Shown here: one piece after another, positions 4,214 to 57,184 of the stretch | Layout: each line of letters begins with the position of its first letter | Numbering within the stretch: position 1 is the first letter of the stretch | Origin: Haliotis cracherodii | Lineage: Eukaryota | Assembly: GCF_022045235.1 (NCBI RefSeq) | Contig: NW_027266341.1 | Coordinates: 37,014,001-37,078,000, forward strand | Reading direction: 5' to 3' | Length of the DNA: 64,000 nt | Made by a program: the position numbers and the translations under genes | The notes under the pieces: model-generated | The model's input: the letters and a program-made list of their open reading frames with translations, nothing else | What the model was told of the DNA's origin: nothing | The model's database searches: none

Positions 4214-4340
4214 CTTTCTACTTCACAGCAAGTTTTTGTAGAACGTGGATTGCAACACTGTCCTTCACAAAGGAAAAATCTGCCCAGTATTCTAGAAGGT
4301 TCAGTAGAAAATTCCTTGAAGCATAGTTGCGAAGCTTGAG
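4214..4340 (-). CDS. Gene A exon 2: six-Cys Shisa-like/CYYR1-like ectodomain
   Basis: Acceptor ctcgttacag, phase 1. Encodes SQASQLCFKEFSTEPSRILGRFFLCEGQCCNPRSTKTCCEVE. Phase-2 donor AG|GTTGGT, with an alternative phase-2 donor GG|GTGAGT (exon end 4190). Downstream exons presumably lie left of the window. Confidence 0.8.
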
Positions 4341-4373
4341 CTGTAACGAGAATTGTAATGTCTTCATTCCTCA

Positions 4374-4652
4374 CGGGTGGCCCAGTCGTCTCAGGCGCCA
4401 CGATTCGCTGTGCAGAGATGCGTCTCTTGGGCACGCCAGAAACCATGATTGTGGGTTCGAATCCCAGTTCGCCCCGATTATGTTTCTAGGTTTGTCAGCA
4501 CCACACCCGTTTCGTGGGTTTCACCGAAGTGGTAAACGTCTGAGACCCGCATCACTTCGGGCGTTCCTCCCAAATTAAGCTGACACGCCGCGATATATAA
4601 CTGGAATACCGTTAAAAGCGGCGTTAAACCCAACTCTCTCACTCACTCATTC
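4374..4652 (+). mobile_element. tRNA(Leu-like)-derived SINE family B
   Basis: Head ggtggcccagtcgtctcaggcgcc, B box GGTTCGAATCCC, central cacttcgggcgttcctccc, tail aaaagcggcgttaaac...(ctca)n. Homologous to 20987-21226 and 21586-21790. Confidence 0.85.
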
Positions 4653-5118
4653 GTTAGCTTTGAGTAACACAACTGTTGAACACGCACCCTCTCACTCATA
4701 CACACTCCCCCACTCACTCACACACCCCTCAAGCACGTACCCAAGAGCTATTGTGTTGGGAAACATGTGATATCCTTCGACAAGTGACTGGATAATATTA
4801 CATTTACGATTGGTAAGGTTTCATATTAATTTTAAAATAGCATATTTTTGTGGATACAATTGCAAAAGTCCAAACATATAACAGAAGCACTGTATACATG
4901 CATTAGCAGCAGACCACGGCAGACCAGGGCACAATGACCCGCGATCAGCCAGGTCGCCCCGATCTTCCATTCACTGGCGAGTAGTGTGGGCATTTTCTGA
5001 CATTTTCCTGGAGTTCTCACGCGGTTCAGCAGTGAGATTTGTTTCCAACATCTACCTATATACACCTTAACCATATTTGATTAATAGAGGTACAAACGAT
5101 GAACCAGTAAATACTTAC

Positions 5119-5167
5119 AAACAACGGTCAACACCAGCACAGTGAATCCATTCTGTATAAGGGTCAT
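5119..5167 (-). CDS. Gene A exon 1: signal peptide
   Basis: MTLIQNGFTVLVLTVV + T|GTAAGT. 49 nt, phase 1; same length and ending as exon 1 of genes C and F. Confidence 0.8.
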
Positions 5168-54257: not shown

Positions 54258-54523
54258 TTAAACGTTGGCTGTTATGGCTTTGGTGGGTTCGGGGTTGTTT
54301 TCAAAATGCTGAGCAGCATCAGGATGTGTAAAGGGAGGGACCGCTCCACCAGGTGCTGGGAAGACGGCTTGTCCTTGTGTTGGATCATAGACTGGTCCTG
54401 GTCCGGGGGAGTAGGGTGGTGGAGGCTGTGCCATCCCTGCAGGTTGGGGGTAGTACGTACCTTGAGCAGGCTGAGATGGGTAGATGTATCCCGCATTATA
54501 TGCAGCACCGGTGGGGTTTGTAC
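54258..54523 (-). CDS. Gene F exon 4: Pro/Tyr/Gln-rich tail with PPPY
   Basis: ttatcctttatccag|GT, phase 1. Encodes GTNPTGAAYNAGYIYPSQPAQGTYYPQPAGMAQPPPPYSPGPGPVYDPTQGQAVFPAPGGAVPPFTHPDAAQHFENNPEPTKAITANV*. Confidence 0.9.
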
Positions 54524-56131
54524 CTGGATAAAGGATAAAGGATACATTTGAGGCTAGTAAGGGTATTACTTCACTTTGTCAACGGCAATAAGTTATTCTG
54601 CATCAGCCTTATAGGCATATAGTAAAACAACAGAGCAGCCAAATTCGTAATGATAAGAAGCATGTCATATTTTAATACTACCCCCTGTACAAGTACAAGC
54701 CTGCTTTTTCGTATATATGGGAATATTGAAAAGCAAGCATAGAACCACATAGCAACATTAAGATATATTTTCTTTCAAGAACTATAGAGCAGTAAAATAG
54801 TAACATTATCATACACGTTTTGAATAAAATCATGTGGTGATTGGTAATGGTCCGCGGCGCCTGAATATCAATATTATAAATGGCAAAAGAATTGTATGAA
54901 CTTGTATGATTAGGTGCATATTATCCATTTATTTAAGAGTTCCAGATTTAAGCAACGTATAGATTTAACACTAGTATTGAATGTCCTTACTCGACTGTGA
55001 TTTTGAAAGTTATCTAAAAGCACCACATACATAATAGTGAGTGAGTGAGGTGAGTTTTACGCATCAGTAGTATTTCGTTCTTGCCATGCAATCATATTGC
55101 AGGGGGACACACTGGCCATGCTCCATGTTGTTATGGGTCTATTTAATGAGTCTTAATTAACTTTTAACAAACGTCACTTTTTCTATGTCTTCATAACGTG
55201 AAGTTCACCAACATCAGAGCCAGGGCAATGGTATGGAGTTGTTGATTGAAATATTGTAAACATGCCATCACAGGGAATAAAGCCACACTGCTGTTGGCAA
55301 TGATTGATAGCTTGTGATGCCAATGATAGTTTTAAGAGACAATACTCCCCCGATATCTGTACAACTACTATGAGTTGACCTTTTTAACCATCTTCCTCAC
55401 ACGTGTGGTCACTATATATAGCTCACGGTTTCTAGTATTTTTATTTCCGATAAAAGAGAATATGCCCATATTGTATATGCAACTGCAATTCATGAACGAT
55501 TCAATCCAGCGGTTATATTTCAATTCATGTCACTAGACTAAATGATTGCTGTCAAAATAGGGACATTATACTTAACAAGAAATGTATTAAAAGGCAGTGA
55601 CAAGTCCGGTCGGGTTTGAACCAATGAGATTGCAGCACACACTTCCACTCGCATTTACTGTTTATGTAGAAACGTTGTATTGAGACTAACAACTGAATGA
55701 TACGATTGGTGATTAAGTCTTTTGGTGTATTATAAACGTACATTTGGTTCCTTAAGATGACAAAAAAATATTTCCTTAAAGTTTGAGACATACTTCCCGT
55801 AATAAGAGAAAACCAAACAAACTTAATTGTGAAACAAGTTGACATTCTCAGAGACTTTAAGAAAGGAAACCACAAAGACAAATGCATAAATGTCATCATA
55901 GCACACGCCACGTTGTGGAGCAACACCAACACACAAAAGATTTGAACTGGTACAAGCTTCCTGGTATTCCACTTGATTCATCAACGATAGTGATGTTGTT
56001 CCTTTTAAAAGTATAATTAAAGATTGAAGCTGTTACGTATCGTACGTATCTACTACTTATTGATGGCTTATACATATTGATGGGTTATACATATTGATGG
56101 ATTATACATATTGATGGAGCATGTGTAGTAC

Positions 56132-56325
56132 CTGTTGATACAACGGCAAGTTGTTGGTTGGTGGTCACGACGTGACCTCGATGACCTTGAGATGACCTAC
56201 AGCAGCAGACACAGCACAAAACTACTCCTGCGATTATGGCGATCAAGATGAGTGAACAACCCACGGAGACCCCGATAATCACGTTTGACACTGCATGCCT
56301 GGTGCCGGTGGAGACTGAGGTGGTG
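56132..56325 (-). CDS. Gene F exon 3: transmembrane helix plus Cys cluster
   Basis: gtgtttcttctag|C ... G|GTACTA, phase 2 to phase 1. Encodes TTSVSTGTRHAVSNVIIGVSVGCSLILIAIIAGVVLCCVCCCRSSQGHRGHVVTTNQQLAVVST. Confidence 0.9.
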
Positions 56326-57084
56326 CTAGAAGAAACACGAATTAGTTACACAGTTGGAAGTCTAACTGGATCTATTACGACCGGACCTGGGCCAGACAAA
56401 CAAGTGATTGATAGTATGATAAACGGCAGAGAATAAACATCCTTGAGTATATGTATCAGTAACAGATTCCATTGGCAGAAGCGGTGAAAACCATATGAAT
56501 GGATCACTGAAAAATTAGAGATGACACTGATGAAAACGGTAAGCATGTCCTTCCCTACCGTATCACCCGCCACACACGCAGCTTGTGTAAAAAGAAAGTG
56601 TTTGTTTCTTGCCAAACCAGCAGCACTCAAAACACTTTCCTTAATCATACAACATCTCTGCTAAACTTCCCATGCCATCGAGGACACGTTGTCGCTGTAT
56701 CTGACCCTCCGATCAAATGAAGTCGCTTTTGTGAAAGACAATATCGGGCCCCCACGAGGGACAATTGCAAATAATTTGTTATCACTCTAATTTTGTGAAA
56801 CTACCGGCAACTGCGTTTCGCTAGATAACAGGCTTAAAAATGTATCTGATTTTCACAGTTTCGTACACTGAATTTATTTCTGAAGTATTTATGGTATGTC
56901 ACCATAGTAACCAACGTAATGTATATGATACTGTATGTTTAAATCAAGCTACATAATCTGATTTGGTATGTGACTGCATTTTCACATTTTTGCTGATGAA
57001 ATAATGCGAGTAAATTGGGATAGGAATGTCTGCTTGTTATAATCTTTAACGTCACAAGTGATGCATCTTTACAATCATACTTAC

Positions 57085-57184
57085 CAACAATACCTGAAAG
57101 AGCTTGACCCACAACATGAATCGTCACACGTCAGTGTCCTGGTACGAAAATTCCTATACTCGGTGCACACTTCAAAGGCATAGG
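57085..57184 (-). CDS. Gene F exon 2: six-Cys ectodomain
   Basis: caattttcag|CC ... TG|GTAAGT, 100 nt. Encodes SYAFEVCTEYRNFRTRTLTCDDSCCGSSSFRYC(C); the sixth Cys codon is completed by splicing (TG+C). Confidence 0.92.

What the first reader, a model, noticed from the sequence alone, without database searches (positions are those of the whole stretch)
4214..57184. Fixed Cys scaffold with one length-hypervariable loop in the ectodomain
Seen: the motif is C-xN-C-x3-CC-x7-CC with N = 17 (A), 10 (B), 9 (C), 13 (D), 12 (F). The x3 spacing is invariant in all five and x7 in the four intact copies, while non-Cys residues are almost unshared. Loop charge swings from acidic (D: PSVDDDGHHLTIT; C: EDEAGLPLS) to basic (F: TEYRNFRTRTLT). 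Inference: a disulfide mini-scaffold displaying one variable recognition loop, all on a single exon, as seen in diversified recognition families and disulfide-rich peptides.
Basis: partly seen in the sequence, partly recalled or inferred. Interest (0 to 1): 0.75.

Follow-up and report, generated by a model that had tools for sequence, protein, structure and literature searches.

The report
Abalone Shisa-like/CYYR1-like membrane adaptor gene array
The five cysteine motifs are real, but they are the known six-cysteine signature of Shisa-like/CYYR1-like single-pass membrane adaptor proteins, here in an abalone tandem gene array, and the variable "loop" shows no sign of special diversifying evolution.

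Summary
Five minus-strand exons carry C-xN-C-x3-CC-x7-CC with N = 17, 10, 9, 13 and 12. Chance gives about 0 such motifs per window. No assembly gap touches a motif exon.

The motif is the published C*C*CC*CC hallmark of Shisa-like (STMC6) proteins (PMC5578492, passages). Each exon lies between a signal-peptide exon and a transmembrane exon, and the tail exons of C, D and F carry PPxY motifs. Public proteins identical to genes B and D are named "shisa-4-like" and "uncharacterized" in Haliotis cracherodii. Relatives pass Pfam CYYR1; the window's own genes stay just under the Pfam cut-offs. Two AlphaFold models each pick mouse Shisa3 N-domain (5m0w) as top hit of 48,161 chains, at low Z (3.0 and 2.6).

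The loop is a beta-hairpin of variable length. It is identical between two abalone species in gene D. Over three genes it is not enriched in changes (5/35 against 43/463). Among recent paralogues its dN/dS is 0.47.

Gene C lacks the last CC and is out of frame. The scan had already noted this array (s1-844294, s1-826192).

The parts
4190..4340 (-). Gene A Cys exon (N = 17; CC followed by N, not G). The donor at 4190 is predicted only.
   Evidence: Acceptor phase 1. The in-frame reference 4192-4341 starts one base inside the intron.
5119..5167 (-). Gene A exon 1: a 16-residue hydrophobic signal-peptide-like start plus 1 nt, donor TTT|GTAAGT.
   Evidence: Similar to B's exon 1.
400..3650 (.). 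CAGACAGA-type satellite, probably inside gene A's intron 2. TM-like and PPTY exons that would fit gene A lie outside the window (L025 8926-8828 and 7780-7625, minus).
   Evidence: Assignment of the outside exons to gene A is inferred.
20681..20780 (-). Gene B Cys exon (N = 10).
   Evidence: 100% match to public protein P0005, apart from the split first codon.
22878..22928 (-). Gene B exon 1 (signal peptide).
   Evidence: 17/17 to P0005.
19801..19967 (-). Gene B transmembrane exon with a juxtamembrane Cys cluster.
   Evidence: Pfam CYYR1 E = 4e-4, below the cut-off.
17532..17696 (-). Gene B cytoplasmic Pro/Tyr-rich last exon. It has no [LP]PxY motif; the H. rufescens orthologue has PPPY at the same place.
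31850..31941 (-). Gene C Cys exon (N = 9). The last CC is replaced by LL and the donor is in phase 0, so it would read the next exon out of frame; it looks broken.
34018..34066 (-). Gene C exon 1 (signal peptide, donor TTT|GTGAGT).
30130..30363 (-). Open piece holding gene C's transmembrane exon (Cys cluster CCCVYC).
28253..28501 (-). Open piece holding gene C's cytoplasmic exon with PPPY.
41064..41178 (-). Gene D Cys exon (N = 13).
   Evidence: Shisa_N E = 0.0011, 19.4 bits. AlphaFold mean pLDDT 86.6.
43942..43984 (-). Gene D exon 1. It ends at the edge of the N run 43807-43941.
39131..39246 (-). Gene D transmembrane exon.
   Evidence: 40/40 to P0002.
38576..38821 (-). Gene D cytoplasmic exon with PPPY and PPSY.
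57085..57184 (-). Gene F Cys exon (N = 12). It ends with TG of the sixth Cys codon.
   Evidence: Contig record 9 of run X15 covers exactly 57085-57184 joined to the TM exon.
60754..60802 (-). Gene F exon 1 (signal peptide).
   Evidence: The loose end of a run X20 contig at 57184 equals the window letters from 60754 on.
56132..56325 (-). Gene F transmembrane exon. Its first base C completes the sixth Cys codon; it carries a CCVCCC cluster.
   Evidence: (joints 56323>57085 and 54519>56128, cut +4).
54261..54523 (-). Gene F cytoplasmic exon with PPPY.

Best explanation
The five motifs are the luminal/extracellular cysteine-rich domains of five paralogous genes (A, B, C, D, F) of the Shisa-like (STMC6) superfamily, nearest to CYYR1. 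They sit in a tandem array on one abalone chromosome.

The gene plan is shown for B, D and F; for A the transmembrane and tail exons are inferred outside the window, and C is broken:
- exon 1: a signal peptide (14 to 17 codons plus 1 nt);
- exon 2: the six-Cys domain;
- exon 3: a short stalk, one transmembrane helix and, in B, C and F, a juxtamembrane Cys cluster;
- exon 4: a Pro/Tyr-rich cytoplasmic tail, which carries [LP]PxY motifs in C, D and F.

Inferred mechanism, by analogy with characterised members. The six cysteines form three disulfides that hold a small beta-rich fold like the Shisa3 N-domain. The C1-C2 segment is a beta-hairpin whose length differs between old paralogues. The protein sits in endomembranes or the plasma membrane. 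Its PPxY tail recruits WW-domain E3 ligases of the NEDD4 family. It thereby tunes the trafficking or degradation of partner membrane proteins or of the ligase itself.

The length variation of the hairpin reflects old divergence between paralogues of a fast-evolving, lineage-specific family, not a dedicated hypervariable site. Gene C looks like a pseudogene. Gene B has lost its canonical PY motif.
For: Gene structure. Acceptor phase 1 in 5 of 5 Cys exons and donor phase 2 in 4 of 5. Signal-peptide exons were found for A, B, C and F and for D. TM exons were found for B, C, D and F. PY motifs: D 2, F 1, C PPPY/PPYY overlapping, A-candidate 1, B 0.

Public spliced proteins match the window exons at 100% once alignment overhang and split codons are set aside. 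P0002 is gene D ('uncharacterized protein') and P0005 is gene B ('protein shisa-4-like'), both Haliotis cracherodii. Relatives are named CYYR1-like, shisa-4-like or shisa-5-like.

Transcript-like contigs of two runs show F's introns 2 and 3 at the predicted bases, with GT..AG ends at intron 3 as tabulated, and exon 1 joined to the Cys exon.

Pfam. Shisa_N is the only family hit by the Cys exons, in 3 of 5 (E = 0.0011 to 0.59), and is matched by 8 of 11 full-length relatives at E <= 0.01. CYYR1 is passed by P0003, P0006 and P0008 (47.8-48.9 bits, cut-off 31). Paralogue exons of the same array pass Shisa_N, for example at C78:37142693 with 24.5 bits.

Profile and fold. hhalign of the family against four other Shisa_N exons of the genome gives probability 71% and E = 3.6e-5 over the CC-x7-CC core. 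In VIA-align against 48,161 PDB representatives, 5m0w_A (mouse Shisa3 N-domain) is rank 1 for model D (Z 3.0, rmsd 2.6, 38/38 residues aligned, 29% identity; one other chain reaches Z >= 2). It is the only chain with Z >= 2 for model A (Z 2.6).

Literature. C*C*CC*CC plus a TM helix plus PY motifs define Shisa-like proteins (PMC5578492, passages). STMC6 is defined in PMC6125347 (passages). CYYR1 binds WWP1/WWP2 through PPxY motifs at late endosomes (PMC11399591, passages).
Against: None of the window's own genes reaches a Pfam gathering score. D scores 20.7 against 22 for Shisa_N. B has no family at E <= 1 as a whole protein. F's orthologue P0009 scores 20 against 31 for CYYR1 and 18.9 against 22 for Shisa_N.

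Foldseek gave no significant match for either model, and 5m0w is absent from model A's 28 rows. Z values of 2.6-3.0 are low in absolute terms. AlphaFold may have seen 5m0w in training.

The hhalign match covers only 14 columns. B lacks a PY motif, and A's TM and tail exons lie outside the window and are only inferred.

No function has been tested for any abalone member. Disulfide pairing, localisation and E3 binding are inferred by analogy. The RNA label of runs X15 and X20 is the tool's guess, and those runs carry other organism labels.
Confidence: 0.85

Rival explanations
1. One reading: a diversified recognition family. The Cys scaffold displays one hypervariable loop that is under diversifying selection to recognise varied ligands, such as microbes, gametes or self/non-self markers.
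For: Loop length (9-17 residues in the window, up to about 23 in paralogue L018) and charge differ strongly between paralogues. The family is expanded in tandem: 22 places in the genome, 19 of them on one contig. The 36-position profile found only Haliotis proteins among 1.84 billion representatives, 6 hits at E <= 0.001. Gene B's loop has 4 of 10 residues changed between two species. Whole-exon dN/dS of some recent pairs is near or above 1.
Against: The D loop is identical in two species, and D's ectodomain is its most conserved part (p = 0.0025). Summed orthologue changes are 5/35 in the loop against 43/463 elsewhere (p = 0.37). Pooled loop dN/dS is 0.47, against 1.50 for the other ectodomain positions. 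The Cys exon is not faster than the other exons. Recent paralogues keep the loop length and most of its residues. The cytoplasmic PPxY tail fits a trafficking adaptor.
Confidence: 0.1
2. Precursors of secreted disulfide-rich peptides (toxin-, defensin- or pheromone-like), in which exon 2 encodes the mature peptide.
For: A signal peptide is directly followed by a 30-40 residue six-Cys module on one exon.
Against: The Cys exon has no in-frame stop at its end. It is spliced in frame to a TM exon in public models and in transcript-like contigs. Its best structural and family matches are Shisa-type.
Confidence: 0.03
3. A decaying array: most copies are pseudogenes, and the variation is neutral drift.
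For: Gene C lacks the last CC and is out of phase. L009 has a stop in the loop and L012 a frame break. B has lost its PY motif. dN/dS is 0.5-0.65 over all exons of the F subgroup, which suggests relaxed constraint.
Against: The exons found for A, B, D and F have open frames, and the splice phases fit (predicted only for A). B and D have public gene models with conserved orthologues. F is seen spliced in transcript-like contigs. All six Cys are kept in 4 of 5 copies. dN/dS stays below 1.
Confidence: 0.07

Closest known systems
[quoted passage not shown]
   Same: The order of parts is the same: signal peptide, six-Cys domain, one TM helix with nearby cysteines, then a Pro/Tyr-rich tail with PPxY. 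Abalone relatives P0003, P0006 and P0008 pass the Pfam cut-off, and NCBI names several 'CYYR1-like'. The mechanism known for human CYYR1 is PPxY-dependent recruitment of WWP1/WWP2 at late endosomes (PMC11399591, passages).
   Different: The window's own genes score below the cut-off (F orthologue 20 bits, B and D none). They have 0-2 PY motifs, where human CYYR1 has three. The family is multiplied in tandem arrays.
Shisa family (Shisa1-9; Pfam Shisa_N PF13908; structure 5m0w, mouse Shisa3 N-domain)
   Same: They share the CC-G-x-[YH]CC core with x7 spacing, near-threshold Shisa_N hits and a top structural match to 5m0w. NCBI names B 'shisa-4-like'.
   Different: Canonical Shisa proteins have eight cysteines, C*C*CC*C*CC*C (PMC10531659, passages). 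These have six. C2-C3 is a fixed x3 here, whereas one of four other Shisa_N exons of the same genome has x13.
Other STMC6 members: WBP1, WBP1L/OPAL1, VOPP1, TMEM92
   Same: Single-pass proteins with six conserved Cys and PPxY tails that bind WW-domain proteins (PMC6125347 and PMC11399591, passages).
   Different: No Pfam hit to those families appeared at the thresholds used. I made no direct comparison with their sequences.

Membership tests
Shisa-like / STMC6 superfamily | Six Cys arranged C*C*CC*CC directly after a signal peptide (PMC5578492, passages) | tested here: met
   Met in A, B, D and F; in F the sixth Cys is completed by splicing. C lacks the last pair.
Shisa-like / STMC6 superfamily | One transmembrane helix after the Cys domain | tested here: met
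   TM exons were found for B, C, D and F. For A there is only a candidate outside the window.
Shisa-like / STMC6 superfamily | Pro-rich cytoplasmic tail with PY ([LP]PxY) motifs | tested here: met
   D has PPPY and PPSY, F has PPPY, C has PPPY and the A-candidate has PPTY. B has none, while its H. rufescens orthologue has PPPY.
Shisa-like / STMC6 superfamily | Fold of the Cys domain like a solved Shisa N-domain | tested here: inconclusive
   5m0w_A is rank 1 of 48,161 chains for both models, but Z is only 3.0 and 2.6. Foldseek was not significant.
Pfam Shisa_N (PF13908) | Score at or above the gathering cut-off of 22 bits | tested here: not met
   The window's best is D with 19.4 bits (exon) or 20.7 bits (P0002). 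F exon scores 14.8 and B exon 10.7; A and C have no hit. Paralogue exons of the same or sister arrays do pass (24.5, 27.8 and 22.1 bits).
Pfam CYYR1 (PF10873) | Score at or above the gathering cut-off of 31 bits | tested here: not met
   Window genes: B TM exon 21.3 bits, F TM exon 14.1, F orthologue P0009 20, and P0002 and P0005 none. Relatives P0003, P0006 and P0008 pass at 48.9, 47.8 and 48.6 bits.
Canonical Shisa1-9 | Eight-Cys pattern C*C*CC*C*CC*C (PMC10531659, passages) | tested here: not met
   The ectodomain exon has only six Cys.
Diversifying recognition families | Excess of replacement changes (dN/dS > 1) concentrated in the variable loop | tested here: not met
   Pooled loop dN/dS is 0.47. 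Orthologue changes are 5/35 in the loop against 43/463 elsewhere (p = 0.37). The D loop is unchanged. The sample is small, and no codon data from a second species were available.
Secreted disulfide-rich peptides | The mature product ends after the Cys module, with no membrane anchor | tested here: not met
   The Cys module is spliced in frame to a TM exon.

The most novel reading that the evidence does not exclude
The abalone lineage has multiplied a CYYR1/Shisa-like adaptor into arrays of about 20 genes on one chromosome. In these, the length and charge of the C1-C2 beta-hairpin set which membrane partner each paralogue captures for NEDD4-type ubiquitination. That would make the array a combinatorial set of trafficking adaptors for lineage-expanded receptor families, with some members, such as B, still changing their hairpin between sister species.
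Probability: 0.2. Interest if true: 0.5.

Novelty: new member of a known kind. Interest (0 to 1): 0.25.

Why it matters
It turns an apparently new 'hypervariable scaffold' into a known family. It assigns the publicly 'uncharacterized' gene D, and the A, C and F genes for which I retrieved no public H. cracherodii protein, to the Shisa-like/CYYR1-like adaptors. It also documents a lineage-specific tandem expansion in abalone, of at least 10 Cys exons in this array and 19 on the contig.

If the hairpin sets partner choice, the array would be a natural series for studying how STMC6 ectodomains pick their cargo. That question is poorly understood even in mammals. As it stands, this is ordinary gene-family biology.

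Tried and rejected
- **Foldseek against PDB.** No match at E <= 0.001 for either model. 5m0w appeared only at rank 36 for D and not at all among A's 28 rows.
- **The search for homologous proteins.** P0002, P0006 and P0005 returned only 1, 4 and 2 proteins. So only one orthologue species (H. rufescens) could be compared for each of B, D and F, and no codon data of a second species were available. True orthologue dN/dS was therefore not computed.
- **Read laying difference table.** It was cut (274 rows not shown) and lists no row inside F's Cys exon. I could only note 6 differences in 100 letters there, against 7 in 196 in the TM exon and about 4-5% in the introns, for run X15's contigs (table 8). 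The listed pieces of run X10 leave the Cys exon uncovered, which proves nothing.
- **Exon 1 of D.** The heuristic search failed. The exon was located only with the public protein.
- **Gene E.** A search for further exons around the TM-like exon 48511-48648 gave nothing convincing.
- **Papers.** Pei & Grishin 2012, the defining STMC6 paper, is not held. I rely on passages in papers that cite it, and its own figures on spacer variation are unseen. The supplement S1 Fig of PMC5578492 was not seen.
- **Literature searches.** Shisa with abalone terms and Shisa with mollusc/expansion terms listed no paper on a molluscan Shisa-like expansion. None of the 12 rows contains the word shisa. One search's only relevant row is a mussel atlas that notes Shisa Pfam enrichment in gills (PMC5549309, passages). 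This is not proof that none exists.
- **The secreted-peptide/toxin reading.** Considered and rejected; see the rival explanations.
- **Spliced models.** Exons were searched one by one, and the full-length sequences used are public proteins returned by the tools.

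
Full report
**1. Is it there?**

Six-frame translation finds the core C-x3-CC on the minus strand at 4252-4269 (A), 20713-20730 (B), 31877-31894 (C), 41102-41119 (D) and 57111-57128 (F). Three copies (A, B, D) carry the full C-xN-C-x3-CC-x7-CC in one open stretch. In 200 first-order Markov random windows the mean count of such motifs was 0.0, and none reached 3.

The N runs are at 8793-8983, 34288-34457 and 43807-43941. None touches a motif exon, so each motif is read in continuous letters. The third run begins directly after the last base (43942) of gene D's first exon and hides its donor. 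I filled nothing.

**2. Anatomy.**

All five Cys exons start after an AG in phase 1. Taking the nearest GT donor, A, B, D and F end in phase 2; this is shown for F by the joint, fits the public models for B and D, and is prediction only for A. In F the exon ends with TG, and the next exon starts with C, so the sixth Cys codon spans the intron. Copy C has LL where the last CC should be, and its donor is in phase 0, so it would enter the next exon out of frame and looks broken.

Upstream of each Cys exon lies a short first exon: M plus a hydrophobic run of 16 codons plus 1 nt, with donor TTT|GTRAGT.
- A: 5167-5119
- B: 22925-22877 (from the second ATG; the public model P0005 starts one codon earlier, at 22928)
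- C: 34066-34018
- F: 60802-60754
- D: 43984-43942, 14 codons plus 1 nt

Downstream lie a transmembrane exon and a Pro/Tyr-rich last exon.
- Transmembrane exons: B 19801-19967, D 39131-39246, F 56132-56325, and C within 30130-30363.
- [LP]PxY motifs in the last exon: D has PPPY and PPSY, F has PPPY, C has PPPY, and B has none.

Gene A's intron 2 seems to hold a 3.3-kb CAGACAGA-type satellite at 400-3650. A TM-like exon and a PPTY exon that fit A lie just outside the window, at L025 8926-8828 and 7780-7625. Their assignment to A is inferred.

**3. Public models and transcripts.**

A profile of 14 paralogous Cys exons (alignment A2) was searched against 1.84 billion representative proteins. It found 6 proteins at E <= 0.001. 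All are 161-231 residues long, with the match at about residues 18-52.

By the sources' own names all six are Haliotis proteins. P0002 is 'uncharacterized protein' and P0005 is 'protein shisa-4-like', both H. cracherodii. [quoted passage not shown] P0002 and P0005 match the window's D and B exons at 100%, once alignment overhang and split codons are set aside. They show the same four-exon plan I had derived.

For F, contigs of two runs that the tool guesses to be RNA were laid on the window. These runs carry other organism labels than the window's. They give the joints 54519>56128 (skips 1608 letters, ends CT..AC, cut +4, which equals my intron 54524-56131) and 56323>57085 (intron 2). A loose end at 57184 has 30 letters equal to the window from 60754 on, which is the end of exon 1. 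So the Cys exon is spliced between a signal-peptide exon and a TM exon. It is not the end of a secreted peptide.

Exons were searched singly, and full-length sequences are the public ones.

**4. What family?**

Papers citing Pei & Grishin 2012 state that most Shisa-like (STMC6) proteins have six Cys in a C*C*CC*CC pattern after a signal sequence, a single TM helix and PY motifs. They list WBP1, VOPP1, TMEM92 and CYYR1 as members (PMC5578492 and PMC6125347, passages). The original paper is not held.

Pfam results:
- Shisa_N is the only family hit by the Cys exons: D E = 0.0011, F 0.031, B 0.59, A and C none.
- CYYR1 is hit by the TM exons of B (E = 4e-4) and F (0.065).
- Of 11 full-length relatives, 8 match Shisa_N and 6 match CYYR1 at E <= 0.01.
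- P0003, P0006 and P0008 pass the CYYR1 cut-off, with 47.8-48.9 bits against 31.

Against this, no gene of the window itself reaches a gathering score. D has 20.7 bits against 22. B as a whole protein matches nothing at E <= 1. F's orthologue has 20 against 31 and 18.9 against 22.

Other evidence:
- In the genome, Shisa_N passes its cut-off at paralogous exons of the same array (C78:37142693, 24.5 bits) and of a sister array.
- hhalign of the family profile against four other Shisa_N exons of this genome gives probability 71% and E = 3.6e-5, over only the 14 columns of the CC-x7-CC core.

**5. Fold.**

AlphaFold2 with a 21-row alignment gave mean pLDDT 86.6 for D's exon and 76.9 for A's. Both have the same topology. 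The C1-C2 segment is a beta-hairpin: strands 5-10/16-21 in D and 5-12/19-25 in A. Two short strands and a helical turn follow around the CC pairs.

Foldseek found nothing significant. VIA-align against 48,161 PDB representatives gave:
- For D, 2 chains with Z >= 2. The top is 5m0w_A, the N-terminal domain of mouse Shisa 3 (Z 3.0, rmsd 2.6 A, 38 of 38 residues aligned, 29% identity).
- For A, 1 chain with Z >= 2, the same 5m0w_A (Z 2.6, rmsd 3.4, 41 residues aligned).

The Z values are low, as expected for about 40 residues. The model may also owe something to AlphaFold's training on that entry. I count this as consistent, not proof.

**6. Is the loop hypervariable?**

Orthologues, H. cracherodii against H. 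rufescens, at the protein level only:
- D: 159/173 residues identical. There are 0 changes in the first 60 residues (signal peptide, loop, whole Cys domain) and 14 in the remaining 113 (Fisher p = 0.0025).
- B: 82% identical, loop 4/10 changed.
- F: loop 1/12 changed.
- Summed over the three genes, with Cys excluded: loop 5/35 against 43/463 elsewhere, p = 0.37.

Recent paralogues, Nei-Gojobori counts:
- Pooled over 13 non-independent pairs, loop dN/dS is 0.47. The other non-Cys ectodomain positions give 1.50, and the whole exon 0.59.
- Per exon in the F subgroup: Cys exon 0.12-0.64, TM exon 0.56-0.65, tail exon 0.47-0.66.

Recent paralogues keep loop length and most loop residues. So the large differences in N and charge separate old paralogues in which everything else has diverged as well. 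The family as a whole evolves fast, with dN/dS about 0.5-0.65. I see no loop-specific signal. Counts are small, and B deserves a proper test.

**7. Extent.**

A 5-exon profile finds 22 places in the 1.18-Gb genome, 19 of them on contig C78:
- 10 Cys exons at 36.99-37.16 Mb (the window's five plus L010, L007, L006, L016 and L018);
- 6 at 48.70-48.83 Mb, of which L009 has a stop and L012 a frame break;
- 3 at 46.25-46.33 Mb.

**8. Mechanism.**

This is inferred by analogy. Human CYYR1 binds the WW domains of WWP1/WWP2 through its PPxY motifs at late endosomes and drives WWP1 degradation. WBP1L adapts NEDD4-type ligases to CXCR4 (PMC11399591, passages). Shisa proteins bind immature Frizzled and FGF receptors, and their Cys-rich domain is needed for partner binding (PMC5578492 and PMC10531659, passages).

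I therefore read these genes as membrane adaptors. The luminal or extracellular Cys domain contacts partners, and the PPxY tail recruits E3 ligases. The juxtamembrane Cys clusters in B, C and F are candidate palmitoylation sites, by analogy with the proposal in PMC10531659.

**9. Verdict.**

The family is known, and public annotation already names neighbours and orthologues this way.

Earlier notes of this scan (s1-844294 on this stretch, s1-826192 on the next window) read it the same way. I saw them only, after reaching the same reading and testing it.

Noticed in passing
window 400-3650: A 3.3-kb satellite of CAGACAGA-like units (TRF periods 8, 13, 21, 34 and 55) with strong AT skew. It gives long meaningless open frames on the minus strand and probably sits in gene A's intron 2.
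   Followed up: partly
window 17532-17696: Gene B's tail has SPPY where its H. rufescens orthologue (P0011) has PPPY. The only canonical PY motif is therefore lost in this genome's copy.
   Followed up: partly
window 9259-9975: A second terminal-exon-like piece, 51% identical over 70 residues to B's last exon, preceded by a tandem repeat of its 5' part. It is not used in the public model P0005 (earlier notes s1-844326 and s1-844340).
   Followed up: no
No first or last exon was found for it.
   Followed up: partly
window 57742-58063: A very high-copy repeat in F's intron 1. Summed contig word depth is about 400,000 in the DNA runs, against 10-30 in the flanks, and many contigs end there.
   Followed up: no
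window 43942-43984 and the N run 43807-43941: Gene D's first exon ends exactly at the edge of an N run, so its splice donor is unread. The public model still joins exon 1 to exon 2 across the run.
   Followed up: partly
L009 (C78:48797995-48798102) and L012 (C78:48711550-48711606): Two copies in the 48.7-Mb sister array look broken. L009 has a TAG inside the loop. In L012 the first Cys lies in another frame.
   Followed up: no
L026 6486-6373 (minus), C78 about 36.992 Mb: An extra Cys-exon-like fragment about 200 nt upstream of the L010 Cys exon, apparently a partial duplicate.
   Followed up: no
window 12973-14163, 36000-37630 and 50040-51530: Three further minisatellite arrays between the genes. 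Among them are a His/Val-coding-looking repeat at 12973-14163 and a repeat of about 68 nt at 36000-37630.
   Followed up: no
window 57078-57187, run X10: The listed contig pieces of the related species' DNA run stop on both sides of F's Cys exon. The tool warns that a hole proves nothing.
   Followed up: no
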